Virus record (IMG/VR): IMGVR_UViG_3300009184_000029 | Location: 1 to 64,000 of that record | DNA: 64,000 bases | Strand: one strand, 5' to 3' | Shown here: in pieces, positions 9,944 to 58,974 of the stretch | Numbering within the stretch: position 1 is the stretch's first letter | Layout of the letters: the number at the start of each line of letters is the position of its first letter | Made by a program: the position numbers and the translations under genes | The notes under the pieces: generated by a model | What the model saw: the letters and a program-made list of their open reading frames with translations, nothing else | Database searches by the model: none | Told to the model about the DNA's origin: nothing

Positions 9944-10912
9944 ATGAGACACAACAAAGAAACTCAAATTATTAATCATTTATTAGAAACATTCTCACCG
10001 AAAGAATTTTCAAATTTTAATCTATACCAAGAGTTAGGTGTATATACGTTAACTTTTGAGACAATTGACGACTTTAAAAATTCAACTAAAAGAGTTAAAA
10101 ATCTTATTAATTTTATTAATGAAAATTGGTATAACATAGGTAATAAAGATTTTGAATTTATACCTGTGTTAATTGATAAGGATATTATAAACGAAAATCA
10201 TGATAAAGTAAGTGATGAAGAAATAAGTAATAAAATATCAATTATAAACCGCAAAATTGACAGTTACCTCAAGTCAAAGTATCCTTGGTGGGGAAACAGT
10301 TATATTACATCATTTGAAGAAGCGACTCATAATAATAAATTAACTTTAATTATTGAAATTGATTTAGAATTAGATAAAAAATGGGTTGATAGAAGAATAT
10401 TAAAGATTTATGGTAGTGAAAGTAATCCTGAAGGATTTTATGACGAATTAGTTTTAAGTGATTTATTTACAACTAAAGAATATAAAAAAATTGAAGAAAA
10501 TATTGAAAACCTATTCACTGCAGTTTTCGGTAAAAAATTAAACTATACTGAATTTATAATTAACTGTAACATTGATTATGAACCAATTCATGAACAATTG
10601 ACTAATGATTATAAAAATTTAGAAACTAATTTACGTAAATATAAAAACGTCCAAATAGACCCTAAATCAGTATCACCTAGCAAAAATTTCCCATTATCTA
10701 AGTTTCAAAATAATTTAACTCCTGTTGATGAATTTATAAAAGAATTACAGAATACGGGATTTAAGTTTAAAAATTATTATATTAAAGATATGGAAAGTGG
10801 TATGGGATTTAATATTTTCCCAATATCCTACACAAATGGTAAATTAAATATGTCTTTTGAACCACTCTCACCCAATAAAAATGTTATGGTAACGTTTAAA
10901 AGTAATTTTTAA
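9944..10912 (+). CDS. Hypothetical protein
   Basis: 322-aa ORF with TATTTATA box. Confidence 0.65.
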   Translation: MRHNKETQIINHLLETFSPKEFSNFNLYQELGVYTLTFETIDDFKNSTKRVKNLINFINENWYNIGNKDFEFIPVLIDKDIINENHDKVSDEEISNKISIINRKIDSYLKSKYPWWGNSYITSFEEATHNNKLTLIIEIDLELDKKWVDRRILKIYGSESNPEGFYDELVLSDLFTTKEYKKIEENIENLFTAVFGKKLNYTEFIINCNIDYEPIHEQLTNDYKNLETNLRKYKNVQIDPKSVSPSKNFPLSKFQNNLTPVDEFIKELQNTGFKFKNYYIKDMESGMGFNIFPISYTNGKLNMSFEPLSPNKNVMVTFKSNF

Positions 10913-10934
10913 TATTTATTATTTAAATAAAAGA

Positions 10935-12083
10935 ATGAGGCAAATTATAAAAAAGATACTAAAAGAAGAAGTTTTATTAAAGGAAGCAATTGAACATTTT
11001 GGTAGGTCATATTCTTATAAAGATATGAAATCAACAAGTTATAATGGTAATAATTATACTTGGTTTAATAAAATAAATGAGATTCCTTCTGAAGGTAAAT
11101 TATTTGATTTTAGTGATGATGCCTTTGAGCCAGAGATGGTAGTATTTACAAAGTTAGAAGGTAAGAATGGTAATTTTATTTTTAACAGCTCAGACTTAAA
11201 ACCAAATAAAAATGGGGATGGATTAAGTATACTGACTTCTAAATTAGTTAAAAAGTATCCTGATATATCTAAAAATTCTGAAAATATTGATTATGTTCAG
11301 GTTGCAATGAAGATTAAAAAGGACACTGCTAAAAGATACCAAAAGAAAATTAGACAAATATTTAGAGAAATATTCACACCATTAAATTTGTATGGTGTGT
11401 CAGATTCTTCACCTGACTGTGAAACAAATGAAGGAGTTATAAATTTCAAAGGAATTAATTATGGTAGAGATAATAAATTAGTTTCTAATTGGTCTGTATT
11501 AAACTATTTCGATACTAATTCAGGTGTTATAGAATACCTTCTTGAAAAATTTATGGAATCAGATGAAGGAAAACAAGTAGGTAAAGTAACAGATTTAAAT
11601 TTCGACACTACTGTTAATAAATTCGTTAAATGGTTGTATACTAATAAGGATAGTTTATTTAATCCTAAGTCAAAAGTTTTAGATGACCTTGAAGAAATAA
11701 ATTTAAGGACTATTAAAATAGGTGTACAAAATGAGCAAAGAGCAATCCCTGTTCTATTTAAATTACATAATATAGATGATAGTGGGATAACTCAGTATTG
11801 TCCTGGTTCAAAACAGGATACCTTATATGGAAGGGATTTTAAAATTAATACGGAAGAAAACTTACATTATCAAATAAAACCATTAAGAGGTTTGGTTAAA
11901 GTTGAGGGTGACAATTATATAATTAGAACATCTAATTTTAAGAAATACGGTAATACAGTCCAAAGGTTAATGTTCATCTCGGATAATAACTATTATGTCT
12001 TTAATAATGGAAACTACACTATAAATAACTATGGTGACGTTGTTACTTTTACTGAAAAGCCAATCGCTGAAGGTAAAATATAA
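10935..12083 (+). CDS. Leader-bearing protein (MRQIIKKILKEE) with possible C-terminal PD-(D/E)xK-like nuclease motif
   Basis: Leader motif; GVQNEQRA...QDTLYGRDF...YQIKP fits an E...D..G.D...QxK pattern. Confidence 0.5.
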   Translation: MRQIIKKILKEEVLLKEAIEHFGRSYSYKDMKSTSYNGNNYTWFNKINEIPSEGKLFDFSDDAFEPEMVVFTKLEGKNGNFIFNSSDLKPNKNGDGLSILTSKLVKKYPDISKNSENIDYVQVAMKIKKDTAKRYQKKIRQIFREIFTPLNLYGVSDSSPDCETNEGVINFKGINYGRDNKLVSNWSVLNYFDTNSGVIEYLLEKFMESDEGKQVGKVTDLNFDTTVNKFVKWLYTNKDSLFNPKSKVLDDLEEINLRTIKIGVQNEQRAIPVLFKLHNIDDSGITQYCPGSKQDTLYGRDFKINTEENLHYQIKPLRGLVKVEGDNYIIRTSNFKKYGNTVQRLMFISDNNYYVFNNGNYTINNYGDVVTFTEKPIAEGKI

Positions 12084-12103
12084 ATTCTCAAATATTTATT
12101 AGT

Positions 12104-12547
12104 ATGAGTCTGTTTAGCCAACTAAATAGAATTAAAGAGATAATGTTAGAATCTGAATCTAACGTTAAAATTTTTAAGTCTTTAAATTCTGACGGTGTTC
12201 ACTTCAAAGTTGGTGACAGTAATAAAACGTATGGAAGTTGTTCATTAAAGGATTTTGAAAATGCTTTAGAGTCTGAATTATTCCTTACATTTTTTAATAC
12301 TGACAAATTCAATAACAAAAATTCATACTATCTCGAAAATTTAGAGATAACCCCCAATTACAGGGGTAAGGGTTACTCCCATAAACTTTTAGATTCATGT
12401 AAACAGGAAAGCGTAAAAAACAAAAAAAAATTCATCATCATTATTGTTGATAATGATAATTTGGTGGCTAAGAACCTTTATGACAAACAAGGTTTTGTTA
12501 AGTCTGAAAGTAGTGGTAATAAATCATTATATTACTTAAAGACATAA
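12104..12547 (+). CDS. GNAT acetyltransferase with N-terminal leader (LNRIKEIMLES)
   Basis: YLENLEITPNYRGKGYSHKLL acetyl-CoA motif A; NLVAKNLYDKQGF motif B. Confidence 0.8.
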   Translation: MSLFSQLNRIKEIMLESESNVKIFKSLNSDGVHFKVGDSNKTYGSCSLKDFENALESELFLTFFNTDKFNNKNSYYLENLEITPNYRGKGYSHKLLDSCKQESVKNKKKFIIIIVDNDNLVAKNLYDKQGFVKSESSGNKSLYYLKT

Positions 12548-12567
12548 TCCTTTTTAAAAACAAAAAA

Positions 12568-12867
12568 ATGAAGACGGTAGGAAATGAAGTTGATAAGATA
12601 AGAAAAATAATGGGATTTATTTTAGAATCAAAAAAAATAGATAGACCTTATTCTGAAAAAAACAAAGTTAATTATAACAAAATGAAACATTCTGATGATT
12701 ATGTTGAACATCCTGATTTTAATCAAAAATTTGATTATATCGAGGAGATTGACCAAATTATAGAAAAATGGTCAGAGAAGTATAAAATGAGTATAGACTG
12801 TGATAACCCTAAAGGATTCTCCCAAAGAGCTCACTGTAAAGGTAAGAGTGGTAGAAGAAAAAAATAA
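12568..12867 (+). CDS. Leader-bearing small protein with CDNPKGFSQRAHC motif
   Basis: KIRKIMGFILES leader; C-terminal Cys/His motif recalled from phage head-associated proteins. Confidence 0.6.
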   Translation: MKTVGNEVDKIRKIMGFILESKKIDRPYSEKNKVNYNKMKHSDDYVEHPDFNQKFDYIEEIDQIIEKWSEKYKMSIDCDNPKGFSQRAHCKGKSGRRKK

Positions 12868-12872
12868 ATATT

Positions 12873-12900: not shown

Positions 12901-12901
12901 A

Positions 12902-13150: not shown

Positions 13151-13179
13151 TTTTAAATGTTTTAAATATTAATAATGTT

Positions 13180-14843: not shown

Positions 14844-15245
14844 TTATACAAAGACTACACTTTTTATACCCATAACATTATTTTCGGGGAAATATTGACT
14901 ATAAATATCCTGTATTATGTACTTACCATGTATTGACCATAATGGGTGAGGGAGAAATGACTCAAATAATTTATCTAATTCACGACTATAATAAATTTCA
15001 CCATTACGACTTATCTTATCTAAATATCTGTATGGTACGAACAATATTAATATTTTACCATCTGAACCAAGTAGAGCAATTTTATTGTTATCATCTTCAT
15101 TATATGATTTAATCATATTTGAGATTAAAGGAATCAGTTTATTACTTAGTTTAGAGTACTGATGCTCATATTCCTTATCACGCCAATCCCTCTCAATTTT
15201 TTCAGAAATTAATTTATATTGTGATTCGGTGATGATGTATTTCAT
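14844..15245 (-). CDS. Leader-bearing protein (MKYIITESQ)
   Basis: Leader class A; TATTTATA 5 nt upstream on minus strand. Confidence 0.7.
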   Translation of the reverse strand: MKYIITESQYKLISEKIERDWRDKEYEHQYSKLSNKLIPLISNMIKSYNEDDNNKIALLGSDGKILILFVPYRYLDKISRNGEIYYSRELDKLFESFLPHPLWSIHGKYIIQDIYSQYFPENNVMGIKSVVFV

Positions 15246-15277: not shown

Positions 15278-15892
15278 ATGAACCTAAAGGAATCCATAAG
15301 AAGAATATTAAAAGAAGAAAGGAATGTTAAAAACACATTAGTGAAACTTATTGATGAGTTTGGTATTGAACAAGCCTCCAAAATTACCGCGATTTCTATC
15401 ACAAAATTAGTTCAACTATCTGATGTAAAAATTAATAATGTAATTGCTAATAAACTATTAGTTGAAAATTTAAACAAGGGTAAATTAAAAGATACCTATA
15501 AACAATTCAAGATAGAATCAAGTATAAATGATGTTTTTTATTGGCAAGGTGAATTACAAACAGGACACTATACTGATAAATACACTGAATCAATTACAGC
15601 AATGGCGACACCATTTTGGGATGGTGAAGATTATACTCCTGTTGAGATTGAGTGGTTTACTCTATTGGACAGAAGTAAACCAAATGAAGTGAAGATGGTT
15701 GTTGAGACAGAGGGTTATGGAAGTTTTTACCAAACATTTAAAGATAAAACAAGTTTTGATAGTGTAGAAGAGTTATTTAATTGGTATGAAAAAGTTTATT
15801 TACCTGGTGTATATAACATAATAATGCACTTATTACCTGAAGTGCATATTTTTATTGATGAAAAATTAGATGAGGATAGAAGAGACAATTAA
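15278..15892 (+). CDS. Leader-bearing protein (MNLKESIRRILKEE)
   Basis: Leader class B; body resembles 24774. Confidence 0.7.
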   Translation: MNLKESIRRILKEERNVKNTLVKLIDEFGIEQASKITAISITKLVQLSDVKINNVIANKLLVENLNKGKLKDTYKQFKIESSINDVFYWQGELQTGHYTDKYTESITAMATPFWDGEDYTPVEIEWFTLLDRSKPNEVKMVVETEGYGSFYQTFKDKTSFDSVEELFNWYEKVYLPGVYNIIMHLLPEVHIFIDEKLDEDRRDN

Positions 15893-16458: not shown

Positions 16459-17349
16459 ATGAATCTACAAGAGAATATACAAAGAATTAAAGAAATGATG
16501 GGACTCATTACCGAAGAAAAAAAAGATAAAACCATTGTTCTTTTGGATGGTACCTCGTCTGCTGGTAAATCACATACACTTAAACATTTAAAGGCCGTTC
16601 CGTATTACGAAGCGAATGACCCAAACCAATTGGTTGTTATTGCAACTGATGATTTTAGTGGAACAGGTGAAGGTGAAGGTAAAGAAGGTGAAGAAAGAAG
16701 ATTAAAATTGGACCACCCCAATATAAGACAATGGGCGAAGGAAAATGAAGATGCTGGAGTTGTATCAGGAAAATATCGTAAAGATGGTAAAGATGTACCT
16801 AAAAATCCATACGAGAAAGAATATATTGAAGGGACTGACCCAAGATTATGGTATGTGGCTCAAGAAATTAAAACAGGTCCTTGGAAAAAAATTGTAATAG
16901 ACGATATTGGTAAAGGAGTATTACAATACTTACCTGGTGTTAAATTAAAATATATTCTGTTACACACTCCATTACATGTTCTTTTAAAGAATGTCTACGA
17001 AAGAAATGAAAGGGCGAAAAATGATAAGAACTTCAAAAATGATGATAGGGATATTAAAATGGTGTTAGACCAATACTCGGAGAAATATGAGGCAACAAAG
17101 TCCAAACCTGATATTACTAAAGGGGACCCAAAAACAATATTAACTAAGAGAGGTATTACAGATTTACTTGAGACAAATGGTGTGAAGAATAAACACATAG
17201 ATGAGTTTTTAAATAGTATAAATTTAACTAAAGATGGAGATTACTACATCAAAGTTAGGGATTCATATTTGACACCTGAAACACAATTAATTAATGTTGA
17301 TAGTAAAAGAACTGTCTATTTAAAAGATATTGATAAAGAATTAAAATGA
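16459..17349 (+). CDS. Leader-bearing P-loop kinase (chloramphenicol phosphotransferase-like)
   Basis: MNLQENIQRIKEMMGLITEE leader; LLDGTSSAGKS Walker A of CPT-like type; IVIDD; lid RNER. Confidence 0.7.
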   Translation: MNLQENIQRIKEMMGLITEEKKDKTIVLLDGTSSAGKSHTLKHLKAVPYYEANDPNQLVVIATDDFSGTGEGEGKEGEERRLKLDHPNIRQWAKENEDAGVVSGKYRKDGKDVPKNPYEKEYIEGTDPRLWYVAQEIKTGPWKKIVIDDIGKGVLQYLPGVKLKYILLHTPLHVLLKNVYERNERAKNDKNFKNDDRDIKMVLDQYSEKYEATKSKPDITKGDPKTILTKRGITDLLETNGVKNKHIDEFLNSINLTKDGDYYIKVRDSYLTPETQLINVDSKRTVYLKDIDKELK

Positions 17350-17981
17350 GTTTAATACAAACCATAAAAAAAATATTAAGGGAAGAGGTCAATGAGGCCT
17401 ATTTAAAACCAAGTGAAAAATCCGAGAAATTTATTTTGGATAGATTGAATGCTATGGCTTTAGGTGCTGAAATATACCACCTTGAAAGTTATAAAACAAG
17501 ACATGATTTTGAGTTTTGTAAAAATGGAAAACAAATAATGAATCTTGCATTGTTCTTTGAAGAAACTGACGATAACACCCCAACGTCTGAAAGAAAATTT
17601 GAATCTTCAACATTATCAATACAAGAAGATTTTGTTGGTGGGATATTAAAGACTTTTCCTGTTAGAAGAAATTATCTTTATTACATGATTGAAGAATGGT
17701 TTGAGGATACTTTTTTAAGTGAAATCTCAAATATGATAGGTAGAAATGATATATCTGTTGAAGAATTATCATTTAATGATAGGACATATGCGTGTGTCCC
17801 ACCAATTAAAGAAGTACCTGAAGGAGTTACTCAAGACGAGATGATTAAGGTTATTATGAACAATACACTATGGCGTAAAAAAGATTTATTAGCGTTAGAA
17901 GAAAGAGAACCTGGGTCTATAGAATTTTTTTATTTACAAAAACTTCGTAATAATGAGGTTAATAGATTAGATAATAGATAA
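17346..17981 (+). CDS. Leader-bearing hypothetical protein (IKKILREEVNE)
   Basis: Leader class B; overlap with previous gene. Confidence 0.65.
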   Translation: MSLIQTIKKILREEVNEAYLKPSEKSEKFILDRLNAMALGAEIYHLESYKTRHDFEFCKNGKQIMNLALFFEETDDNTPTSERKFESSTLSIQEDFVGGILKTFPVRRNYLYYMIEEWFEDTFLSEISNMIGRNDISVEELSFNDRTYACVPPIKEVPEGVTQDEMIKVIMNNTLWRKKDLLALEEREPGSIEFFYLQKLRNNEVNRLDNR

Positions 17982-21302: not shown

Positions 21303-21602
21303 TTAATCAATAATCAATAAATTCTTAAATTCAAAACCTGTCTTACTCTCAACCCAATCTCCGATAATATTCATCGTTTCACCTCTATCTAAACTAAAAA
21401 AGGAGGATATCGTTTTTACAAAATCTTTTTTTATAAAACAATATGTTTGTTTGAAGGTGGATATTATGATTTCACGGTTTTCAATATTATAATTGTTCCA
21501 AAAGTGATAATCACCATCATTGTTTGTAACATAAAAGTTTTGTATATTAAGATAACGAAAGATTACTTTCTCTAACTGTGATTCTGTTATCAAGTATTTC
21601 AT
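21303..21602 (-). CDS. Paralogue-family protein (MKYLITESQ)
   Basis: Leader A; IFRYL...ISSFFSL...IIGDWVE. Confidence 0.75.
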   Translation of the reverse strand: MKYLITESQLEKVIFRYLNIQNFYVTNNDGDYHFWNNYNIENREIIISTFKQTYCFIKKDFVKTISSFFSLDRGETMNIIGDWVESKTGFEFKNLLIID

Positions 21603-21955
21603 ATATATAAATCAAGAAATTGTTCTAAGGTAATACCAAGAGGTCGAATACCTAAAAAGTTCATAAATTCAGATTCATCATAACTATCACCTCTATCATC
21701 AAGAATCAATGGGTGGTTTGAACTATAATTCATTTGATATAACACCTTATGATTATCATCCAATTCTATAAGATACATCGGACCATAGTTATCCATCAAA
21801 CTTCTCCTTAATAGACCATCGTAAGTAAAATGGAAATCAAAATCATTCAGTATTCCACGTATACTTGGGTCAAGCTCCACACGACCTGTGAGGTCAATAT
21901 TAAACTTATCCTTAATAAATGTTTTTAATTTAGATTCGGTGATTAATAGTTTCAT
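21599..21955 (-). CDS. Leader-bearing protein (MKLLITESK)
   Basis: Start reassigned; AATATTTATAA box upstream. Confidence 0.65.
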   Translation of the reverse strand: MKLLITESKLKTFIKDKFNIDLTGRVELDPSIRGILNDFDFHFTYDGLLRRSLMDNYGPMYLIELDDNHKVLYQMNYSSNHPLILDDRGDSYDESEFMNFLGIRPLGITLEQFLDLYI

Positions 21956-22308: not shown

Positions 22309-22587
22309 TTAATCCGAGTGTAAGAATTTAAGTAATGCTCTAATATATTGGGAACGTTTCTCATAGAATTCAGTTTCATTACCATATTGTAAAAACTCCT
22401 CACGTCTATGTCTATCAATGAAATCTTCAATTAATCCATAAATGTGGTCATCCCTGTCAGCAGAATCTTCAAAATCTTCATCATCCATAGCGTAGTTATA
22501 ATCATCCTTAAGCGCTTTCAATTCATCTATAGAAAACCTTCTAAGTAAAAATATGTCTAACTGTGATTCGGTGATAAGGTATTTCAT
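22309..22587 (-). CDS. Leader-bearing acidic protein (MKYLITESQ)
   Basis: Start reassigned; overlapping TATCTTTG and TATTTATA boxes upstream. Confidence 0.65.
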   Translation of the reverse strand: MKYLITESQLDIFLLRRFSIDELKALKDDYNYAMDDEDFEDSADRDDHIYGLIEDFIDRHRREEFLQYGNETEFYEKRSQYIRALLKFLHSD

Positions 22588-24741: not shown

Positions 24742-24760
24742 ATGATAATAAATACAATTA

Positions 24761-24768
24761 TATTTATA
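24761..24768 (+). promoter_or_regulatory. Putative late promoter box TATTTATA
   Basis: 5 nt before ATG 24774. Confidence 0.6.
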
Positions 24769-24773
24769 ATATT

Positions 24774-44555: not shown

Positions 44556-44759
44556 GTGATGACTTGGAGACAAATATTCCACAAGAACGTGGCAACATAC
44601 TGTCTAATGGTTGGGATGTTTTTCAACCCCTTAGGCTTCGACATCATTTTCAAAATGATTCTAGACTCGACAAATTCCTATTGGATTACCACAGGGATTT
44701 TTTATGGTATATCTCTATCATTTTTTGGGTTATATTTCTTTTTTCGTAAAAAACAATGA
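44556..44759 (+). CDS. Small two-TM membrane protein
   Basis: FFNPLGFD motif between hydrophobic segments; ATGA overlap with next gene. Confidence 0.55.
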   Translation: MMTWRQIFHKNVATYCLMVGMFFNPLGFDIIFKMILDSTNSYWITTGIFYGISLSFFGLYFFFRKKQ

Positions 44760-47654: not shown

Positions 47655-48137
47655 ATGAACTCGTATTTCCTAAACATTAGCAACGAAGAAAAAAATTCAA
47701 TTGCTGAAAAACATAGAACTTTATATAATGGATTCCAAACTATGAAAATCCATAAGACAAATGAAACCCCATTAAATGTTGAGGATTTGGCATTAGATAA
47801 AGGTGGAGTTACTCTAACCTCTAAAAATGAAATATCAACTTATACTAACACTATGTATATGACAGAATCTAAATCTGAAGAAGTATGTGAGGAGTGTGGT
47901 AAAATGTATGAGGGTGAAGGAGAAACTTGTGAATGTTGGAAAAATGAGATGTATGAAGGGGAAGTATGTGAGGAGTGCGGTGAGATGTATGAAGGAGAAG
48001 TATGTGAAGAGTGCTCAGGGATGAAATACGAGTATGAGAACATCGAAGAGTCAATACAGTTAAAATCTAAGTCTAAACAAGTACATGAAAGTATTGAAAA
48101 GACTTTAGATATGTTTAGAAGATTCGGAAACAAGTGA
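47655..48137 (+). CDS. Leader-bearing protein with EVCEECG/MYEG repeats
   Basis: ISNEEKNSIAEKH leader; three EVCEEC units. Confidence 0.65.
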   Translation: MNSYFLNISNEEKNSIAEKHRTLYNGFQTMKIHKTNETPLNVEDLALDKGGVTLTSKNEISTYTNTMYMTESKSEEVCEECGKMYEGEGETCECWKNEMYEGEVCEECGEMYEGEVCEECSGMKYEYENIEESIQLKSKSKQVHESIEKTLDMFRRFGNK

Positions 48138-49621: not shown

Positions 49622-50869
49622 ATGAGTTATAAAAATTTAAAAATATCTGACACTGAAAAGAAGTTAATTCTTGAATCTCATAATGGGGGACAAAATTCTC
49701 ATGTTATGGCGATGAATATCTCAGTTGATGGTAAATATATGGTTGTTTTTGATAACCTAATGGACCTTAAAACCAATAAAAATTTAGGTAACATATGGGA
49801 AAACAAAGATGCCTTCAATACTATAGTTGAACATCTATTTAGTTTAAATCCGGATTCTGAACATAGAGAATATATTAATGAATCTGAAGTGATTCAAGAT
49901 ATATGGTATAAAGTTGATGAGATTAAATTATTTGTTAAGGAGAATATTAATTCTGCAGAAAATTTAATTACTGAAGGTTTTTGGGGTTGGGTTAAAGAAA
50001 AGGCTGGTCAAGCTTGGGAAGGAGTAAAGAGTGTTGGGTCTATGGTTGGTAAAGGTATTATTTGGTTATTAAGAAAACTAAGGTCATTTTTATATCATCC
50101 TGTTGGTATTGCGTTAGACATAGTATTAACTGCGACAGGTATCGGAAAACTAGCCCCCATGATTATGTGGGGAGCAGTTGTTTGTTTAGATATATATGAA
50201 TTATTAACAGGAGATTATGCTGAGGAAGATAAAAACTTACCGATGTGGGCAAGACTATTATTTTTAGCGGTTGATTGTTTAGCATTGGTTTTTACAGGTG
50301 CCGTATCTAAAACAGTTAGAGTTGGAGTTGAGTCAGTGTTAACAGGTGCTAAAGGAATGACAGGAATATTAACTAAATTTCCAAAACTAGCGTCTTTCTT
50401 AAAAGGATTCACAGGATTTCTTCCAAAGATAATTGCACCTATAAAAAGTTTTTTACAATGGGTTGGAAAGAGTATTCCAGCAACAAGTAAATTTGTTGCT
50501 AAAATAAGTTCAGGTATGGACAGAATTTTTGCCGAAGTTGGTCAACTTTCTATGAAACATCAACAAACTGCATACCAACAAGCTGCACAATCGGCTTCTA
50601 AACAGTTAGGAAAAAATATTACTCAAAAAGAATTAAGTGCTGCCGCAACACAACAAGCGAAAAAAGGATTTAAACAGGCAGCAATTGCGACAGGAGTGAT
50701 AGGGGCCGCTCACGTAGGATTATCCGCATTATCAGGAGATGAAAATAAATCAGAAGAAGAAATTTCAAATACTACACCTGAAGAAAATAAAATGTTGGCT
50801 CAACAATTTTCGAGCACAATTGAACAGGACCCTGAGTTCGAAAAATTAAAACAAGAATTATCCCAATAA
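49622..50869 (+). CDS. Large leader-bearing protein with multiple amphipathic/hydrophobic helices
   Basis: ISDTEKKLILESH leader; internal INES and LITE; Gly/Ala-rich TM-like segments. Confidence 0.65.
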   Translation: MSYKNLKISDTEKKLILESHNGGQNSHVMAMNISVDGKYMVVFDNLMDLKTNKNLGNIWENKDAFNTIVEHLFSLNPDSEHREYINESEVIQDIWYKVDEIKLFVKENINSAENLITEGFWGWVKEKAGQAWEGVKSVGSMVGKGIIWLLRKLRSFLYHPVGIALDIVLTATGIGKLAPMIMWGAVVCLDIYELLTGDYAEEDKNLPMWARLLFLAVDCLALVFTGAVSKTVRVGVESVLTGAKGMTGILTKFPKLASFLKGFTGFLPKIIAPIKSFLQWVGKSIPATSKFVAKISSGMDRIFAEVGQLSMKHQQTAYQQAAQSASKQLGKNITQKELSAAATQQAKKGFKQAAIATGVIGAAHVGLSALSGDENKSEEEISNTTPEENKMLAQQFSSTIEQDPEFEKLKQELSQ

Positions 50870-50876
50870 TAAAATT

Positions 50877-52193
50877 ATGAAAGCAAATTTTTTAATATCA
50901 GAAGATGAAAAAAGAAGAATATTAGGTCTTCACTTGACAGAAAACTTGGTACATGGTACATCGAAAGATAAAGAGTTGATAAAAGAAATTCAAAGTATTG
51001 TTAAAGGTACTGCGGAGACTTTAGTTGATGTTGGAAAAAATAATAAAGTTTTTTTCCAAGATTTAAAGGCCGCGATGGAGGGTATCGGAATAACTGGTGT
51101 TAAAAGTGTTGAGGAATTTAGTGCCGCGATTAAAGATGGTAAAATTACCGCAACTGACGCAGTTAAAGTTTATTCTAAACTTTTTGAGATGAACAAAAGT
51201 TTGGCCCAAGAAGTTTTAGCAACTGTTAAAGAATCCCCATCATTTAAAGATTTAGTTAATTTATCATTCCCACAAGGAAAAGCGTTCTTAAACGCTGAAG
51301 GAAAACTTACCGCAGATGCGGCTAAGAAAATGGAATTGATTAAAAATTATTACGCTAAGGTTGGTTTAAAACCTGAGGCCATCGAGGGAGCAATTAAAGA
51401 ATTAAAGGCGGGTGGATTATCAAGTGAGATTAAATTTGCCGGTAGTAGAACTGCGGATGTTGCTAAAAATATTGCGAAGGTTGAGGGGTCGGCTTTAGGT
51501 AAAGAACTAGCACAAGGTGGTTTAGTAAAAGATGCTGCACAGGCAGGAATTAAACAAGGTACTAATGTTAAAATGGTAACTGTTGTTGATGGTAAAGCGG
51601 TAATCAAAGACGGACCTGTAGAATTATTTAAGACAGGTAAAGAATATTTCATTAAAATGCCATTATGGAAAAAAGTAGCATCAATTGGAGCGTTGGCAGG
51701 TTTAATTTACTTATTAACAGGTGATAGTGATGCATCAATCATAGTACCGCCACAAGCATCACCAATACTTGATAATGAGCTTTATTTCCCACCATATGTT
51801 ATACAAAATGATTGTAAAGTGTTAACTACACCAAAACGTACAGTACGAAATGAACCCGTTAAACCTGAACCCGTTAAACCAGTTGATTCTGAACCTGTTA
51901 TTAGTCCTATTGTTGGACCAACACCTTCACCAAGTCCAGAACCTTCGCCAAGTCCAGAGCCAGTTAATGTTGAAGGATTTGCCGGTAGAACTGATTTAAC
52001 AAAAGGTGAATGTAAAGGATTCTTCCAAATCATTGATAGTAGAGACGAACAAAGTGGTGGTAAAACTGCAAATGATAAAGAATTAACAACAATTAAAGCG
52101 TGTCTTCAACAATATAACTTTGTTGGAGATAAACACGGTAAATTGAAGAGAAGATACGGATTAAGTGGAAGTGGAGGAGATAAAGCAATCTAA
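50877..52193 (+). CDS. Large leader-bearing Ala/Lys-rich protein with TM segment and Pro-rich linker
   Basis: ISEDEKRRILGLHLTE leader; VASIGALAGLIYLL; PVKPE/PSPSPE repeats. Confidence 0.65.
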   Translation: MKANFLISEDEKRRILGLHLTENLVHGTSKDKELIKEIQSIVKGTAETLVDVGKNNKVFFQDLKAAMEGIGITGVKSVEEFSAAIKDGKITATDAVKVYSKLFEMNKSLAQEVLATVKESPSFKDLVNLSFPQGKAFLNAEGKLTADAAKKMELIKNYYAKVGLKPEAIEGAIKELKAGGLSSEIKFAGSRTADVAKNIAKVEGSALGKELAQGGLVKDAAQAGIKQGTNVKMVTVVDGKAVIKDGPVELFKTGKEYFIKMPLWKKVASIGALAGLIYLLTGDSDASIIVPPQASPILDNELYFPPYVIQNDCKVLTTPKRTVRNEPVKPEPVKPVDSEPVISPIVGPTPSPSPEPSPSPEPVNVEGFAGRTDLTKGECKGFFQIIDSRDEQSGGKTANDKELTTIKACLQQYNFVGDKHGKLKRRYGLSGSGGDKAI

Positions 52194-52207: not shown

Positions 52208-52966
52208 ATGAAAAAAGAAAAACAAAATTTAAATGAATCATTAAGTAGAATTAAAAACCTCTTTCAACACGAAAGAGGTGTTGTTATATCTGAACAAAGT
52301 TATCGAACTTTATTAAATGAAGAAGCCGCTAAGGGAGATTATTCGAATCCCTATGTTGATTCTGAAATGACAGGAGACGTTGATACTGTTCAACGTATTT
52401 TGGATTTACCAGTTTATCAAACAGGGTTGGAAAGTATAAAAAGTGTATTAGATAAATATGTCAATAAATGGGCGAAAAACGAAGAAAACCCTGCTAATCC
52501 AATCATTGTACCAGCACTTAACAGATTAGGGGAATTGTATACTATAGATGAAAGTGGAGATTCTTTGTATAATGACATTTCATCAATAGGTGAAAGAACC
52601 ATGGGAACCACTGCGATAAATCTTAAAAGACAATGTTTAAATATTTTAATTAATGCTCAAAGCCAACAAGCTCCGGCACCTCAGGCACCAGAAATAGTTT
52701 TAAAATGGGGAGATGGAAGTGAAGCTTCTAAATGTTTTACTCAGATAAAAAAAGACGGACATAGTGTTACGTTAGAAAAATCAGATGATGGGGTAGAATA
52801 TTTTTTGATTGCTTATACTGACCCTTCACTTAAACCCGGATATTTCTATAGAGACGGTGAATTGGCATATGAAGATGTAAATAAACCTGGTGAATTTATT
52901 AGTAAAAAATGGGCTTGTAGTGAACAACCTGATGGAAATGGTAGATACAACATACAATATATTTAA
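52208..52966 (+). CDS. Leader-bearing protein (LNESLSRIKNLF)
   Basis: LNES, ISEQ, LLNEE motifs; possible degenerate annexin-like helix bundle. Confidence 0.6.
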   Translation: MKKEKQNLNESLSRIKNLFQHERGVVISEQSYRTLLNEEAAKGDYSNPYVDSEMTGDVDTVQRILDLPVYQTGLESIKSVLDKYVNKWAKNEENPANPIIVPALNRLGELYTIDESGDSLYNDISSIGERTMGTTAINLKRQCLNILINAQSQQAPAPQAPEIVLKWGDGSEASKCFTQIKKDGHSVTLEKSDDGVEYFLIAYTDPSLKPGYFYRDGELAYEDVNKPGEFISKKWACSEQPDGNGRYNIQYI

Positions 52967-52970: not shown

Positions 52971-54872
52971 ATGAAAAAAAATATAATTTTAGAAACAGGT
53001 TCGGACCCAAGAAGTAAAAGAATGGCCGCTGCCAATAATACAAATAAAGGCGCTGCGAATAAAGGTACGGCAAATAAAGGTGGTACATTATGGACTCAGT
53101 CGCCATTTAAAGATAATGTATCAGCTAACAAGTTTAGAGCTTGGGTTAATAGTACTTACCCTACGGTTGCAACATCTGTTAATTTATCTCCAGAAGGCTC
53201 ACAAACCAATTCATATAGAAATTCTTACATTAAAAAGGCTTGGGAATACCCAACAACCACTGGAGGTAAATTAGGTGATGAATATTTAAAAACTGCTGAT
53301 GGACAGGCTTTAGGTGGAGGAGGTCAACCAGCTCCAGAAGCTGAAGACCTATCTATGTGGAATGATAAGGCTTATTGGACATCTCAAGCGAATACAAAAT
53401 GTTTACTTTCATTGGGTAGTAACTCAGTATTCTCAATTTCAAAGAAAGGAGTTTCAACCCCTATGTTAGGTGTTAACACAACACAAGGTCAAACTTATTA
53501 TTTTGACATGAAAGGTGGGGTTTTCAATAATAAGGGACAATCACTTGGTTTATCTTATTCTTGTGATGGTGACAAGGTAAATTTCTTTCAAGCTGGAACA
53601 AACGAATCAGGACTTAGTTTTAATACAACAAGTTTTCCTAAATTATTTGGTCAACAAGGAACTGTTCAAGGACAACCAAGTCCAACAGGGACAACTGAAA
53701 CAAAAGTTGATATTGGAATTGACGGATTAACCGCTGCGGGTATTACAACCGCTGAGGCGATTAAAGAAATGAATCAATTTAACCCTGCTAAATGTGGTCC
53801 AATCATTCAAAAGTATTACGAATTTGCGGTTAATAATGACCCTATCGAAGTTATTTTAAAACAAGTACCAGGTGGTAATGCAGGAGAAAGATTAGCGAAT
53901 CTTGCGAGAATGCAGATTAATGTTGAGGCTTGTAAAAGAATTATCGTTAATGATGCAGGTGGATTATTTAAAGGAAGAGGTGAGACCGAAAGTGCATTGG
54001 CAAGTTTCTTTAAAGGAAATAGACAAATTAGAAAACAACTTGAATATTTGGCAAACCCATCAAATCCTGTATTAAGATTACCTGACCAAGGGGTTTCTGC
54101 TAATAACCACTTCAAAACATTACAACAATCCTACGGTACTGCAACACAAAACAAAACGTTTAGTGATGAAGCAAAAAAAGAAATTTCATCTTATGTATTT
54201 AAAGAATCTATCAATAAGAGTGACAAATTAATTAATGAAATTGTTTCAGGTAAAATATCTAAATTAATTTCTGAAAATAATAAGAAATTATTAAATGAAA
54301 CAAAATTAATTTCTGAAAGATTTAATGTTATTAAAAATTCTTACGGTAGAATATCTAATGATAAATTTTATCATATGTTAATTAGAGAAACAATTAATAT
54401 GCAAAATAAGGGTTATAATGAAAACTTAATTTGTGAAGGATTATTTGATGATATATTCAGAGGTCTATTTGGTGGTGTTGAAGATACTGCAAAAGAAGAG
54501 TTGTTAGCATATCTATTAAAATTAATGGGTATTGAGAATAATAGTTATCTGTATAACTTATTAATTGTTGCCTTTGGTAACGTTCCAATCGCTGATATTC
54601 CTAAATTGTTTACTGATTGTAGATTTGTTACAAAAATATTCGCGGAATCTATACCTGAAGCAATGATTAGAAAAACTCAAGAAGGTAAAGGTTATGGTTC
54701 AGGGGTTTATGATGTTATTCGTAACACACTGGTAGACGCGATTGAATCTACAGAATTCGTATCAGGTTTAGAATCTAAATTAGGAAACATGATTTGTCCT
54801 TTAGTTGATAAAGTTAAAGGTAATATGGAAAGAGAATCATCTAAAATTAAAGAAATGTATTCAACAAAGTAA
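52971..54872 (+). CDS. Large putative virion protein (MKKNIILETG)
   Basis: Start reassigned; IILE at N-terminus; cluster of INE/ISE/LNE/ICE motifs near C-terminus. Confidence 0.65.
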   Translation: MKKNIILETGSDPRSKRMAAANNTNKGAANKGTANKGGTLWTQSPFKDNVSANKFRAWVNSTYPTVATSVNLSPEGSQTNSYRNSYIKKAWEYPTTTGGKLGDEYLKTADGQALGGGGQPAPEAEDLSMWNDKAYWTSQANTKCLLSLGSNSVFSISKKGVSTPMLGVNTTQGQTYYFDMKGGVFNNKGQSLGLSYSCDGDKVNFFQAGTNESGLSFNTTSFPKLFGQQGTVQGQPSPTGTTETKVDIGIDGLTAAGITTAEAIKEMNQFNPAKCGPIIQKYYEFAVNNDPIEVILKQVPGGNAGERLANLARMQINVEACKRIIVNDAGGLFKGRGETESALASFFKGNRQIRKQLEYLANPSNPVLRLPDQGVSANNHFKTLQQSYGTATQNKTFSDEAKKEISSYVFKESINKSDKLINEIVSGKISKLISENNKKLLNETKLISERFNVIKNSYGRISNDKFYHMLIRETINMQNKGYNENLICEGLFDDIFRGLFGGVEDTAKEELLAYLLKLMGIENNSYLYNLLIVAFGNVPIADIPKLFTDCRFVTKIFAESIPEAMIRKTQEGKGYGSGVYDVIRNTLVDAIESTEFVSGLESKLGNMICPLVDKVKGNMERESSKIKEMYSTK

Positions 54873-56912: not shown

Positions 56913-57632
56913 TTAATGAGGAGCACTCACCAAGTAGTAATCACCTGTTTCTAATTCAGGTAGATAAGATTTTTTCACTTGGTTACCATAATTACTAACC
57001 ATAATAGATTTGTTCTTTTCCTTATCATGTATGATGTCAGAATCAATTCTTTCGTCTTCATCATATAATAATAATTTATCCATTAAATTTTTATCGTAAG
57101 ATATATAATACATTCCTCGTGTTTCATATTCATCGTAGTCATCAGTATATCCGTTTCCATCACATTCATAACACGTTTCATTACCTTGTCCTCCACAATT
57201 ATCACAAGTTACTTCACCATCCCCATCACAGTATCCACAATTATCCCCCTCATCGTCAGTACCATCTCCATTACATTCTGAACATTCAATTTCACCACTT
57301 GAGTCACAATCATTACAGTTTACGGTTCCATCACCACCACAATATTCACAACTTATTTGAGTGTAATTTGACTCTATTTCAGCAATATCAAATCTAAAAA
57401 TATTACTAACTATCGTTTCATAATATTTTTCATAATTTAAATCATCAAATGATATTGATAAAAGAAAACAAATAACAGATAACTCTTTATCATTAAAATT
57501 TCTAAAAAAATTTTGTAATAGATTATCTTTTCTAAAAAAATGAAATATATCATCTGCGGTTTTAATCTTATTTTTCAATAAGATTAATTTAACTCTATTA
57601 TTTACGTATTTTAATAGTTTATCCTTTTCCAT
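56913..57632 (-). CDS. Protein with DnaJ-type CxxCxGxG zinc-finger repeats, no J domain
   Basis: CEYCGGDG, CNDCDSSG, CSECNGDG, CGYCDGDG, CDNCGGQG, CYECDGNG. Confidence 0.75.
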   Translation of the reverse strand: MEKDKLLKYVNNRVKLILLKNKIKTADDIFHFFRKDNLLQNFFRNFNDKELSVICFLLSISFDDLNYEKYYETIVSNIFRFDIAEIESNYTQISCEYCGGDGTVNCNDCDSSGEIECSECNGDGTDDEGDNCGYCDGDGEVTCDNCGGQGNETCYECDGNGYTDDYDEYETRGMYYISYDKNLMDKLLLYDEDERIDSDIIHDKEKNKSIMVSNYGNQVKKSYLPELETGDYYLVSAPH

Positions 57633-57649
57633 ATATTTATAAATATATG
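57630..57649. promoter_or_regulatory. Perfect 20-bp palindrome holding two divergent TATTTATA boxes and both start codons
   Basis: CATATATTTATAAATATATG equals its own reverse complement. Confidence 0.75.
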
Positions 57650-58414
57650 AAAGAGTTGTTATCTGAGGAAATTCAAAAATTTAACAAATTATCTAAATTC
57701 AGTTTTGTTAATGAAGGCGCAAATGCATCTTCATTACGTTCACATGTCGAATCTTTAGGATATAGTAGTAAATCGACTATGGATGAGTCAGGTGACTTAA
57801 ATGGTGACTTAGTTGAGGTTTTGAAAAAATTGGCAACAATGGTTAAAAAGTATAAACCTGATGTTAAATTAAAATTTGGTTCAGGTAACGATAAATTTCA
57901 TAGAAGATTACGTTATGTTAGTAGACATACTAAAGGAGAGGCGGTTGATGTTACAATAGATTCACAAAATTCAAAACTTATTGATGAATTAAATAAATTA
58001 TTTTGTTATATCAGAAAAGAAAACGATGGTTTTAGTTTTATAGATGAGTATAACCATCCATCTAAAGCTTCAACAGGTGGACACTATCATTTTTCATTTA
58101 GAGCTGGAAAACCTGAAGACACAAGAAGTACAAAGTCAATTTGTTCAGGAGTTGATTTATCAGAATTTGATGATTTTAAAGATATATCAAACATTGACGA
58201 TGGTGAATATAAGGATAAGAAAATGAAAGATTTAATTTCTAAAATTTCAGATGAATATGAAAAACCTGAATCTGAGGTTGAATCAAAAATAAAGGAAAAA
58301 CAAAAAACTGAAGGTAATGATTTTATAGAATCATTATTTAAGATGTTTATGGATGAGATTCCTCTTGAAGAAAAAATTAATGAGAGTCTTAAAAGAATGA
58401 AAAAATTAATGTAA
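57647..58414 (+). CDS. M15/Hedgehog-fold peptidase with leader
   Basis: SRHTKGEAVDV and GGHYHFSF zinc motifs; LLSEEIQKF leader; C-terminal KINESLKRMKKL. Confidence 0.7.
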   Translation: MKELLSEEIQKFNKLSKFSFVNEGANASSLRSHVESLGYSSKSTMDESGDLNGDLVEVLKKLATMVKKYKPDVKLKFGSGNDKFHRRLRYVSRHTKGEAVDVTIDSQNSKLIDELNKLFCYIRKENDGFSFIDEYNHPSKASTGGHYHFSFRAGKPEDTRSTKSICSGVDLSEFDDFKDISNIDDGEYKDKKMKDLISKISDEYEKPESEVESKIKEKQKTEGNDFIESLFKMFMDEIPLEEKINESLKRMKKLM

Positions 58415-58974
58415 TGAAAAAACCATTTAACTTTTTTAAATCATATGATGAAATGGAATCAACAACTTTCATCCCATATAGTAAAACAAAAACTAAAGTT
58501 GTTAGTATGTTTGATGGTGTTGTTTCTAGTATTGATTTAGATAAAAAAGTAAAATTAACAACTGAACATGATATTAACGGGTTTGAATTTGATATTGAGT
58601 ATGTTAACGACACTGAAGACGAATATTCTACACCTGATATTAAGGTAAATAAAAAAAGTAAAGTTAGTGAAGGAGAGACTTTATTTTTTATGTCACCTGA
58701 TGTTAATTTAACTGTAACATTTATTGTTGGATTCTCAAAGTACAATTTTGAAAATTTTGTATCAAAATATAAAAATAAAATTGATGTTAAGGATGATAAA
58801 AAGGAGGATAAAGAAGATAAAGGAAAAGAAAACAATTTAACTGCACCTGGTAGTTTAAATTCTTTTTTTGATGAGTTACTTTTAAAACCGATTTTAAATC
58901 CATTGTCAGGTAAGAAACCTATTGAAGAGAATATAAAAGAGGATTTAGAAAGATTTAAAAAACTAATAAAATAA
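58414..58974 (+). CDS. Degenerate M23-like domain protein
   Basis: VVSMFDGVV...TTEH...KVSEGETL; C-terminal IEENIKEDLERFKKL. Confidence 0.5.
   Translation: MKKPFNFFKSYDEMESTTFIPYSKTKTKVVSMFDGVVSSIDLDKKVKLTTEHDINGFEFDIEYVNDTEDEYSTPDIKVNKKSKVSEGETLFFMSPDVNLTVTFIVGFSKYNFENFVSKYKNKIDVKDDKKEDKEDKGKENNLTAPGSLNSFFDELLLKPILNPLSGKKPIEENIKEDLERFKKLIK

What the first reader, a model, noticed from the sequence alone, without database searches (positions are those of the whole stretch)
9944..58974. About 40 unrelated ORFs share short N-terminal leaders ending in (I/L)-x-E: candidate capsid-targeting and prohead-protease system
Seen: recurring leader classes on otherwise dissimilar proteins. Class A MK(Y/I/L/V)(L/I)ITESQ (about 13 genes). 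Class B MNLQExIxR(I/V)L(R/K)EE or RIxxMMGxI(N/T/S)E (about 16). Class C M(K/R)K(V/I)VRL(T/S)ExDL (5). Class D IS(E/N/D)xEKxxI (3). There are also C-terminal INES-type motifs (57647, 58414, 41087, 47655). Almost all contain ITE/LTE/INE/LNE/ILE/LRE. Known: T4 internal proteins carry a ~10-aa capsid-targeting sequence removed by prohead protease gp21, which cuts after (I/L)-x-E. Inference: this phage packages a very large, modular set of internal head proteins for injection at infection, with leaders acting as portable address tags.
Basis: partly seen in the sequence, partly recalled or inferred. Interest (0 to 1): 0.8.

Follow-up and report, generated by a model that had tools for sequence, protein, structure and literature searches.

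The report
Portable capsid-address tags, T4-like phage
A large uncultivated T4-type phage puts the same few 7-20-residue N-terminal tags, each ending in a prohead-protease-type cut site, on about 40 otherwise unrelated proteins; the tags are most likely signals that load these proteins into the capsid, an unusually large version of a trick known from phage T4.

Summary
About 40 ORFs between 10.9 and 54.9 kb start with one of three strong leader types: MK(Y/L/I)(L/I)ITESQ, MNLQExIxR(I/V)L(R/K)EE or ...RIxxMMG, and MKKVVRLTExDL. A fourth type is weak. The motifs occur only directly at a start codon, are conserved as amino acids despite many synonymous changes, and sit on proteins with no other detectable similarity.

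The genome is a T4-type phage of about 230 kb. Five to twelve kb past the window end lie terminase, T4-type portal, two core proteins, a gp21-family (S77) prohead protease, a scaffold and a gp23-type capsid protein.

Homologous cargos carry different leaders in related phages. In a DHH-phosphoesterase family, 47 of 57 members have (I/L/V/M)-x-E directly before the conserved start and 7 begin exactly there with no leader. Both main leaders are absent from 185,579 cellular genomes but occur on 73 and 76 viral contig stretches. Half the tagged genes share the upstream motif TATTTAT with the head genes.

Best reading: capsid-targeting propeptides removed by the gp21-like protease. This is a greatly expanded, multi-tag variant of T4's internal-protein system. 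Packaging and cleavage remain unproven. The C-terminal motifs are not supported.

The parts
10935..12083 (+). class B-like leader gene (MRQIIKKILKEE), 382 aa
   Evidence: A homolog in L045 carries a class A leader (E=2e-26).
12104..12547 (+). class B-like leader gene (..LNRIKEIMLESE), 147 aa
   Evidence: leader HMM E=0.008
12568..12867 (+). class B-like leader gene (..DKIRKIMGFILE), 99 aa
13227..13592 (+). class A-like leader gene (MKILIESSQ), 121 aa
13960..14523 (+). class B-like leader gene (MKDLIKKILKEE), 187 aa
14504..14842 (-). class A-like leader gene (MRIIIKESQ), 112 aa; member of the 110-aa paralog family
14844..15245 (-). class A leader gene (MKYIITESQ), 133 aa
15249..15274 (.). two divergent TATTTATAAT motifs in the 32-nt spacer between 15245(-) and 15278(+); probable late promoters
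15278..15892 (+). class B leader gene (MNLKESIRRILKEE), 204 aa
15870..16316 (+). class B-like leader gene (MRIEETIKRILREE), 148 aa
16459..17349 (+). class B leader gene (MNLQENIQRIKEMMGLITEE), 296 aa, P-loop (GKS) protein
17346..17981 (+). class B-like leader gene (MSLIQTIKKILREE), 211 aa
17983..18396 (+). class B leader gene (MNLQEHIRRVLREE), 137 aa
18398..18841 (+). class B leader gene (MNLQEQISRIQSMMGVINE), 147 aa
18807..19328 (+). class B leader gene (MNLQEEISRIHEMMGVISE), 173 aa
19325..19600 (+). class B leader gene (MNLQEQISRIQSMMRVINE), 91 aa
19597..20598 (+). class B leader gene (MNLQEHIRRVLREE), 333 aa
20592..21296 (+). doubtful class B-like gene (MLKQRILMEGIEE), 234 aa
   Evidence: weak
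21303..21602 (-). class A leader gene (MKYLITESQ), 99 aa, 110-aa family
21599..21955 (-). class A leader gene (MKLLITESK), 118 aa
21969..22301 (-). class A leader gene (MKYLITESQ), 110 aa, 110-aa family
22309..22587 (-). class A leader gene (MKYLITESQ), 92 aa
24100..24396 (-). class A leader gene (MKYLITESQ), 98 aa, 110-aa family
24409..24741 (-). class A leader gene (MKYLITESQ), 110 aa; more than 1,900 metagenomic homologs. The AF2 model puts residues 1-6 outside the fold.
24745..24770 (.). divergent pair of TATTTAT(T/A)AT motifs between 24741(-) and 24774(+)
24774..25229 (+). class B leader gene (MNLQENVRRILREE), 151 aa. E13 is invariant in homologs; a homolog in L017 has a class A-like leader.
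28537..28863 (+). class C leader gene (MKKVVRLTERDL), 108 aa
30703..31014 (+). class A leader gene (MKYIITESQ), 103 aa
31090..31449 (+). class C leader gene (MRKVVRLTESDL), 119 aa
31451..31957 (+). class C leader gene (MKKVVRLTERDL), 168 aa; true start lies inside ORF call 31337-31957
32687..33112 (+). class C leader gene (MKKVVRLTESDL..RVIREEE), 141 aa
34170..34457 (+). class A leader gene (MKVIITESQ), 95 aa; homologs in L013/L064/L072/L082 carry class B leaders
35676..36821 (+). doubtful class B-like gene (MSDLKFIITKVLKE), 381 aa
   Evidence: weak
37242..37616 (+). class C leader gene (MKKIVRLSENDL), 124 aa
37618..38811 (+). tandem class A leader (MKLIITETQLKYLITEG) on a Peptidase_M23 + GH19 peptidoglycan hydrolase, 397 aa
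41087..42493 (+). short class A-like leader (MRKIISE) on a DHH-family phosphoesterase-like protein, 468 aa; the key comparative case
44756..45346 (+). doubtful class A-like gene (MKLNKIILES), 196 aa
   Evidence: weak
47655..48137 (+). class D gene (..LNISNEEKNSI), 160 aa; weak class
49622..50869 (+). class D gene (..LKISDTEKKLI), 415 aa; weak class
50877..52193 (+). class D gene (..FLISEDEKRRI), 438 aa; weak class
52208..52966 (+). class B-like gene (..LNESLSRIKNLF), 252 aa
   Evidence: E=0.14, weak
52971..54872 (+). class A-like gene (MKKNIILETG), 633 aa; corrected start
57634..57645 (.). palindromic TATTTATAAATA between divergent genes 57632(-) and 57647(+)

Best explanation
The window is part of a T4-type phage genome of about 230 kb. 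The leaders are capsid-targeting propeptides, functional analogues of the 10-residue CTS (MKTYQEFIAE) of T4 internal proteins IPII and IPIII.

Proposed mechanism:
1. The tagged genes are expressed together with the head genes.
2. The short N-terminal tag docks each protein onto the scaffolding core while the prohead assembles. Tags are class A MK(Y)LITE, class B MNLQExIxRILRE or ..RIxxMMG.., and class C MKKVVRLTE.
3. The gp21-family serine protease then cuts after the Glu of the (I/L)-x-E at the end of the tag and frees the mature protein inside the head.
4. The mature proteins are delivered with the DNA at the next infection.

The tags are modular and interchangeable, so almost any gene can be turned into cargo. 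Cargos seen here include peptidoglycan hydrolases and binders, P-loop kinases, a phosphatase and a DHH phosphoesterase.

Shown: the leaders, their modularity, the cut-site-like junction, the protease gene, the T4-type head module, and the restriction to viruses. Inferred: docking to the core, cleavage, packaging and injection.
For: 1. T4-type head module. The same genome carries Terminase_6N, Portal_T4, 237-aa and 149-aa proteins, Peptidase_S77, a 501-aa acidic scaffold-like protein and Gp23, in T4 gene order 20-67-68-21-22-23.

2. Protease. It matches T4 gp21 structure 5JBL at E=1.9e-15 and wild-type T4 gp21 at 35% identity. It keeps ELNHP and G(I/V)SSRG.

3. The specificity looks T4-like.
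- The 237-aa core protein has 14 [IL]xE sites, 5.9 per 100 aa, against a background of 1.4. T4 gp22 also has 5.9.
- The capsid-protein propeptide ends in a conserved LINE followed by a variable stretch. In T4 the matching point reads FLTE then AEIGG.

4. Leader swapping. Thirteen cargo clusters carry more than one leader class. In each aligned case the terminal Glu of the leader sits at the start of cargo homology.

5. DHH family. Of 57 representatives with intact N-termini, 47 have [ILVM]xE directly before the conserved SG(I/L)R, whatever the leader type or length (6-100 aa). Seven start M-SG.. with in-frame stops upstream.

6. Distribution. Class A and class B DNA patterns give 0 hits in 185,579 cellular genomes, but 73 and 76 stretches on IMG/VR contigs up to 322 kb. 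At least 6 contigs hold both a leader and the gp21 homolog.

7. Shared upstream motif. TATTTAT lies within 30 nt upstream of 20/40 leader genes against 12/69 other ORFs. It also precedes terminase, the 237-aa protein, gp21 and the scaffold, and is absent from the first 9.9 kb of metabolic genes.

8. Structure models. AF2 places MKYLIT outside the fold of the 110-aa family. The class B leader is a lower-confidence N-terminal helix extension.

9. Cargo domains. They include GH19 x3, M23, phage lysozyme, LysM and PG_binding_1. Such wall-degrading and wall-binding domains are, from general knowledge, typical of virion-borne proteins.

10. T4 precedent. The CTS and L/I-X-E cleavage are described in PMC9026906 and PMC3012670. 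T4 IPII and IPIII start MKTYQEFIAE. T4 Alt starts MELITE.
Against: - There is no proteomic, structural or expression evidence.
- Many cargos are acidic (median pI 5.7), unlike the basic T4 IPII and IPIII (T4 values are my own knowledge).
- The Glu is no more conserved than neighbouring leader residues.
- Some members of the 110-aa family have ITD, which in T4 would block cutting but not targeting (PMC9026906).
- E5 of class B is often Q.
- [IL]xE is common in this AT-rich proteome, at about 13% chance per 10 residues.
- In the DHH family the conserved hydrophobic-x-E could belong to the first helix of the domain rather than being a cut site.
- About 40 cargo species is far beyond any characterised T4-type phage.
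Confidence: 0.65

Rival explanations
1. The leaders are portable targeting or assembly tags, but for another destination or partner than the capsid interior. Possible partners are the tail or baseplate, a host factor, or the phage's ClpB/C-like AAA+ ATPase encoded at 61387-63432. In this reading they need not be cleaved.
For: Modularity and leader swapping fit any address-tag function. Peptidoglycan hydrolases are often tail-borne (my own knowledge; one search shows GH19 hits annotated as baseplate hub or tape measure). A ClpB/C-like ATPase and an M42-like peptidase lie next to the head module. ITD variants and the acidic cargos fit a non-cleaved tag.
Against: The junction [ILVM]xE is kept across leader types and is absent only in leaderless homologs. 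That matches the gp21 specificity and is not needed for a plain docking tag. No precedent is known to me for 7-14-residue N-terminal tags that direct tail assembly. There is no evidence linking the AAA+ protein to the tags.
Confidence: 0.2
2. The shared N-termini are the only surviving trace of one large, fast-diverging paralog superfamily. In this reading the N-terminal strand and helix form a structural or oligomerisation element and carry no address function.
For: Tandem paralogs exist: five 110-aa genes. The biggest single-linkage cluster chains many class A and class B proteins together. AF2 joins the residues after the tag into the first helix of the domain.
Against: Cargos include unrelated Pfam domains (M23+GH19, DHH, P-loop kinase, DSPc, LysM, lysozyme) and range from 91 to 664 aa. 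The same cargo occurs with class A, class B, other, or no leader. Leaderless homologs start exactly at the junction.
Confidence: 0.1
3. The conservation serves the mRNA rather than the protein. The first codons would act as a translation-initiation element for leaderless or near-leaderless late transcripts, or as a recombination cassette that moves promoters between genes.
For: TATTTAT ends only 4-7 nt before the ATG of 15 of the 20 leader genes that carry the motif (11-17 nt in the other 5), so those mRNAs may have almost no 5' UTR.
Against: Leader codons vary freely at synonymous sites while the amino acids stay fixed. Half of the leader genes lie inside operons without the motif, for example 17346-21296. 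Leader classes differ completely in nucleotide sequence.
Confidence: 0.03

Closest known systems
Phage T4 internal proteins IPI, IPII, IPIII (and Alt) with the capsid-targeting sequence, processed by prohead protease gp21
   Same: Short N-terminal tag on otherwise unrelated proteins. The tag ends in (I/L)-x-E: T4 has MKTYQEFIAE then A, and T4 Alt starts MELITE. A gp21-family protease and a T4-type head module are present in the same gene order. The T4 literature already sees the CTS as a way to load diverse defence-countering proteins (PMC3012670, PMC9026906).
   Different: About 40 tagged genes in one 45-kb island, against a handful in T4. At least three distinct, interchangeable tag classes instead of one. 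The tags are not demonstrably homologous to the T4 CTS. Tags occur in tandem in 37618 and in L167. Many cargos are acidic. Cargos include enzymes of 300-660 aa. Nothing has been verified experimentally.
Inner-body and ejection proteins of phiKZ-like giant phages (phiKZ, 201phi2-1, SPN3US) cleaved by a diverged gp21-like protease
   Same: Dozens of head-internal proteins, including paralog families, are processed after Glu by a gp21-related protease. Propeptides can hold several redundant sites (PMC9026906, PMC5694885).
   Different: Those phages cut at S/A-x-E, have no short shared address tag reported, and have a non-T4 head gene set. Here the head module is clearly T4-type and the motif is (I/L)-x-E.
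Cargo-loading peptides of encapsulins, and N-terminal packing signals of extracellular contractile injection systems
   Same: Short portable peptides direct unrelated cargo proteins into a protein shell or tube (my own knowledge).
   Different: These are different machines. Encapsulin tags are mostly C-terminal and are not removed. No homology was tested or expected.

Membership tests
T4-type CTS-tagged internal head proteins processed by gp21 | Genome encodes a gp21-family (Peptidase_S77) prohead protease with the catalytic His and Ser | tested here: met
   PF03420 is on record for the 239-aa gene. The protein matches 5JBL at E=1.9e-15 and T4 gp21 at 35% identity, with ELNHP and GISSRG aligned to T4 ELNHP and GVSSRG. 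That these motifs hold the catalytic residues is my own knowledge.
T4-type CTS-tagged internal head proteins processed by gp21 | T4-type head morphogenesis module (portal gp20, core proteins, scaffold, gp23 capsid protein) | tested here: met
   Portal_T4 and Gp23 Pfam hits, with the same gene order as T4 20-67-68-21-22-23.
T4-type CTS-tagged internal head proteins processed by gp21 | A short N-terminal leader shared by proteins that are otherwise unrelated | tested here: met
   Across 2.1 Mb of related loci there are 552 distinct proteins in 134 cargo clusters.
T4-type CTS-tagged internal head proteins processed by gp21 | Leader ends in an L/I-x-E site, at the boundary with the mature protein | tested here: met
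   ITE then S (class A), LRE then E (class B, E13 invariant), LTE then S (class C). DHH family: 47/57 have [ILVM]xE at the junction and 7/57 are leaderless starting at that point.
T4-type CTS-tagged internal head proteins processed by gp21 | Leader is homologous in sequence to the T4 CTS MKTYQEFIAE | tested here: not met
   T4 IPII and IPIII N-termini were read from NC_000866. Only the format is shared (M-K, hydrophobic residues, I-x-E). There is no alignable similarity beyond that. T4 Alt shares LITE with class A.
T4-type CTS-tagged internal head proteins processed by gp21 | Proteins are present in the mature head, are N-terminally processed, and are injected | not testable with these tools
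   This needs virion proteomics.
Sec/Tat signal peptides | Hydrophobic core of about 10 or more residues after a basic N-terminus, plus a signal-peptidase site | tested here: not met
   Read directly from the sequences. The leaders have at most 4 consecutive hydrophobic residues, followed by T-E-S-Q or charged residues.

The most novel reading that the evidence does not exclude
A widespread clade of uncultivated T4-type phages (130-320 kb contigs) loads dozens of different effector proteins into the capsid. It would do so with at least three interchangeable N-terminal address tags that evolve by tag swapping, giving a modular protein-injection arsenal comparable in logic to secretion-system effector repertoires. 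Most cargos have folds with no known relatives.
Probability: 0.5. Interest if true: 0.8.

Novelty: new variant of a known kind. Interest (0 to 1): 0.7.

Why it matters
If true, three things follow.

1. It would be by far the largest set of capsid-packaged, co-injected proteins inferred for a T4-type phage. That gives a ready catalogue of candidate first-minute takeover and anti-defence proteins. There are 134 cargo clusters in the loci sampled here, and two high-confidence AF2 models had no structural match in the PDB.

2. It would show that capsid-targeting tags are evolvable, exchangeable modules. Three classes occur on the same cargos, sometimes in tandem. This bears on how phages recruit new genes into the virion.

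3. It would offer new short tags for packaging foreign proteins into phage heads, as is done with the T4 CTS.

It also gives a simple sequence rule for predicting virion-internal proteins in metagenomic phage genomes: a shared N-terminal tag ending in (I/L)-x-E, together with an S77 protease.

Tried and rejected
- Megablast of 20 kb against GenBank phages found no match. tblastn of the 110-aa protein found no match.
- A full-text search for the leader string found nothing relevant.
- Pfam and PHROGs scans of the large tagged proteins gave almost nothing beyond M23/GH19, a weak DHH hit and a weak ATPase hit.
- Foldseek searches of both AF2 models against the PDB gave no hit below E=0.1, so cargo functions stay unknown.
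- I tested whether class B leaders mimic the conserved C-terminal helix of the scaffold (..FLRMKD(I/L)M..) or the C-terminus of gp21. A leader HMM scores the scaffold tail at E=7.7, so this is rejected as unsupported. The same test gives E=0.43 for the C-terminus of 57647.
- Basic charge is not a signature of these proteins: median pI is 5.7, the same as other ORFs.
- The contexts of leaderless DHH homologs lie on short contigs and were uninformative.
- I considered a giant virus of eukaryotes at first, because of the AT-rich sequence and the promoter-like motif abutting the ATG. I rejected this after finding the tmRNA, the T4 portal, gp21 and gp23.

Full report
**What the window is**

The window is the reverse complement of bases 161,928-225,927 of JGI contig Ga0209087_1000003 (229,298 bp). 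Near-identical contigs of 222,829 bp and 202,231 bp occur in other samples. GC content is about 30%. No GenBank phage is close at the DNA level.

The window holds a tmRNA gene (59001-59394, minus strand, 133 bits) and a tRNA-Arg. It also holds auxiliary genes:
- response-regulator receiver domain
- ThyA
- GlnA-like protein
- thioesterase
- NUDIX hydrolase
- RmlC
- two glycosyltransferases
- metallophosphatase
- HNH endonuclease
- M42-like peptidase
- ClpB/C-like AAA+ ATPase

Walking past the window end showed the head module. Coordinates are in locus L008; window-equivalent coordinate = L008 + 56,407.

| Gene | L008 coordinates |
|---|---|
| large terminase | 12446-14194 |
| Portal_T4 | 14369-16198 |
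| 237-aa protein | 16222-16935 |
| 149-aa protein | 17047-17496 |
| Peptidase_S77 | 17533-18252 |
| DUF4494 | 18301-18516 |
| 501-aa very acidic scaffold-like protein | 18634-20139 |
| Gp23-family capsid protein (600 aa) | from about 20169 |

This is the T4 gene order 20-67-68-21-22-23. The phage therefore belongs to the T4 superfamily but is distant: its protease is about 41% identical to those of T4-like cyanophages.

**The observation**

The leaders are real.
- A six-frame scan finds the class A, B, C and D motifs only directly at ATG codons. The single exception is the second copy of a tandem leader in 37618.
- A degenerate class A DNA pattern matches 10 times against 0.00 expected.
- The leader codons differ at many synonymous positions, so selection acts on the peptide and not on the DNA.
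- After removal of 30 N-terminal residues, only five small class A proteins remain similar to one another.
- Class D (3 genes) and several 'B-like' or 'A-like' assignments are weak.
- The conserved part is 7-9 residues in class A, about 14-15 in class B and about 12-22 in class C. After that the sequences diverge.

**Is the protease there, and does it look Glu-specific?**

The 239-aa S77 protein matches the T4 gp21 structure 5JBL (E=1.9e-15). It aligns with wild-type T4 gp21 at 35% identity and keeps ELNHP and G(I/V)SSRG. That these motifs hold the catalytic His and Ser is my own knowledge.

Two features of its presumed natural substrates point to the T4 specificity, L/I-X-E (PMC9026906).
- The 237-aa core protein has 14 [IL]xE sites in 237 residues, 5.9 per 100. 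The background is 1.4 per 100. T4 scaffold gp22 has the same density.
- Across 19 variants of the capsid protein, the N-terminal 60 residues are conserved up to LINE. A variable stretch follows, then the conserved SGSFETVVFPIIRRVF. This is the pattern expected around a maturation cut. T4 gp23 reads FLTE then AEIGG at the corresponding point.

**Are the leaders portable?**

Exact degenerate patterns for class A and class B found 73 and 76 stretches on IMG/VR contigs of up to 322 kb. They found none in one genome each of 185,579 bacterial and archaeal species.

In the 2.1 Mb of loci fetched there are 747 tagged ORFs, 552 distinct proteins and 134 BLAST-level cargo clusters. Thirteen clusters carry more than one leader class. 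Alignments show one tag replaced by another at the same place on homologous cargos:
- Window gene 34170 (class A) against homologs in four loci that have class B leaders.
- Window gene 10935 (B-like) against a class A homolog in L045 (E=2e-26).
- Window gene 24774 (class B) against a class A-like homolog in L017.

**The DHH family, the clearest case**

This is the family of window gene 41087. A full search of 1.84 billion representatives gave 364 relatives. Among the best 150 listed, 57 have an intact N-terminus.
- Forty-seven have [ILVM]-x-E immediately before the conserved SG(I/L)R. This holds whether the extension is a 7-residue MKK(L/I)(L/I)KE type, a class A tag plus spacer, a class B tag plus spacer, or something else of up to 100 residues.
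- Seven have no extension and start M-SG(I/L)...
- For two of these proteins (three loci checked), in-frame stop codons lie directly upstream, so the short start is real.

The add-on therefore ends exactly at a gp21-type site, and the cargo domain does not need it.

**Co-regulation**

The 10-mer TATTTATWAW occurs 26 times against 9.2 expected. None lies in the first 9.9 kb. With a looser tail there are 57 copies, and 35 of them lie 40 nt or less upstream of a start on the same strand.

TATTTAT lies within 30 nt upstream of 20 of 40 tagged genes and 12 of 69 others. The untagged-motif leader genes lie downstream in operons.

The same motif precedes the terminase, the 237-aa protein, the protease and the scaffold, both here and in a relative with a 76%-identical protease (L009). 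TATTTATA is the reverse complement of the T4 late promoter TATAAATA (my own knowledge). I read the motif as this phage's late promoter, but that is an inference.

**Structure**

- AF2 on the 110-aa class A family gives pLDDT 82.6. It leaves residues 1-6 as coil and starts the first helix at E7.
- AF2 on the 151-aa class B protein gives pLDDT 91.7. The leader forms the less confident N-terminal end of a long helix.
- Neither model has a PDB match.
- Within the class B family, E13 (L-R-E) is invariant, whereas E5 is often Q. The likely cut is therefore at the end of the tag.

**Cargo**

Pfam hits among 54 larger cargo representatives are: GH19 (3), PG_binding_1 (2), LysM, M23, phage lysozyme, P-loop kinases, a dual-specificity phosphatase and DHH. 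Wall-degrading and wall-binding domains fit proteins that leave the virion at infection. This point is circumstantial.

**Weighing**

The capsid-targeting reading explains, with one known mechanism, the position, size, modularity, junction motif, virus restriction, shared upstream motif and genomic neighbourhood.

Points against it:
- There is no direct evidence of packaging or cleavage.
- Many cargos are acidic.
- Some family members have Asp in place of the Glu.
- The Glu is not more conserved than its neighbours.
- (I/L)-x-E is a cheap motif in this proteome.

I put the capsid-targeting and cleavage model at about 0.65. A tag for some other destination or partner is at about 0.2. A purely structural shared N-terminus is at about 0.1. 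An mRNA-level role is at about 0.03.

**Comparison and novelty**

The mechanism class is known: the T4 CTS and gp21 (PMC9026906, PMC3012670; T4 IPII and IPIII leaders read). Three things are new:
- the scale, about 40 tagged genes in one 45-kb island next to the head module;
- at least three interchangeable tag classes, sometimes in tandem;
- the breadth, with hundreds of tagged proteins across many large uncultivated phage contigs.

The tags are not demonstrably homologous to the T4 CTS, so I file this as a new variant of a known kind.

Noticed in passing
window 59001-59394 (-): A full-length tmRNA gene (Rfam RF00023, 133 bits, model 1-374). ARAGORN did not report it. The ORF call 58389-59054(-) overlapping it is probably spurious. 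A phage-borne tmRNA sits between the tagged-gene island and the head module.
   Followed up: no
window 15249-15274, 24745-24770, 57634-57645, 9924-9941, 39455-39473, 47637-47648: TATTTAT(A/T)A(T/A) motifs in divergent pairs inside intergenic spacers of only about 30 nt. The heptamer ends 4-7 nt before the ATG in 15 of the 20 leader genes that carry the motif and 11-17 nt before it in the other 5. TATTTATA is the reverse complement of the T4 late promoter TATAAATA. With T4-like geometry the transcripts would start at or next to the AUG, giving leaderless late mRNAs. There is no Shine-Dalgarno sequence upstream of these genes.
   Followed up: partly
window 25700-28500: A stretch of atypical composition (GC 0.36 against about 0.30, negative GC skew, C- and G-runs). 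It has poor ORFs on both strands, one with a weak SprT-like metallopeptidase hit (26765-27157, minus strand, E=8e-4). It has no Rfam family at threshold. It may be a foreign insert or a non-coding region.
   Followed up: partly
window 24409-24741 (-) and alignment A1: The 110-aa class A family ends in a conserved LRIP(S/N/K) tail. Before the tail lies a hypervariable stretch of about 10 residues with low pLDDT. This may be a second, C-terminal interaction motif. The family has more than 1,900 homologs in metagenomes and 4-6 tandem copies per genome.
   Followed up: partly
window 37618-37668; L167:3608-3700: Leaders occur in tandem on one protein: MKLIITETQLKYLITEG (two class A copies) and MNLQQTIRKILREEFKSHNNLQETVRKVLR (two class B copies). 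This recalls the redundant propeptide sites described for phiKZ.
   Followed up: no
L008:16222-16935 (window-equivalent about 72.6-73.3 kb): The 237-aa protein between portal and protease has 14 [IL]xE sites (5.9 per 100 aa), the same density as T4 scaffold gp22. It is probably a core protein that is cut into small peptides. The 501-aa scaffold-like protein has a strongly conserved C-terminal 21 residues after an NLIE site.
   Followed up: partly
window 60562-63764: An M42-like aminopeptidase, a ClpB/ClpC-like double AAA+ ATPase (681 aa, minus strand) and a KTSC-domain protein lie just upstream of the head module. The arrangement is conserved in relatives L009 and L012.
   Followed up: no
window 287-9288: A block without the TATTTAT motif that encodes a response-regulator receiver domain, ThyA (368 aa), a sugar-nucleotidyltransferase-like protein (6434-7303), a GlnA-like protein and a 4HBT thioesterase. 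These are probably earlier-expressed auxiliary metabolic genes.
   Followed up: partly
window 48543-54872: A run of larger genes (89, 250, 415, 438, 252 and 633 aa) with Gly/Ala/Thr-rich low-complexity parts and no family hits, apart from a weak tape-measure-like match for 48854-49606. It holds the weak class D motifs. It is interrupted downstream by an HNH endonuclease (54920-55420, minus strand). It may be structural.
   Followed up: partly
window 52890-52970: The mechanical ORF start (GTG at 52890) overlaps the previous gene by 77 nt. The real start is almost certainly the ATG at 52971 (MKKNIILETG), 5 nt after the stop of 52208-52966.
   Followed up: yes
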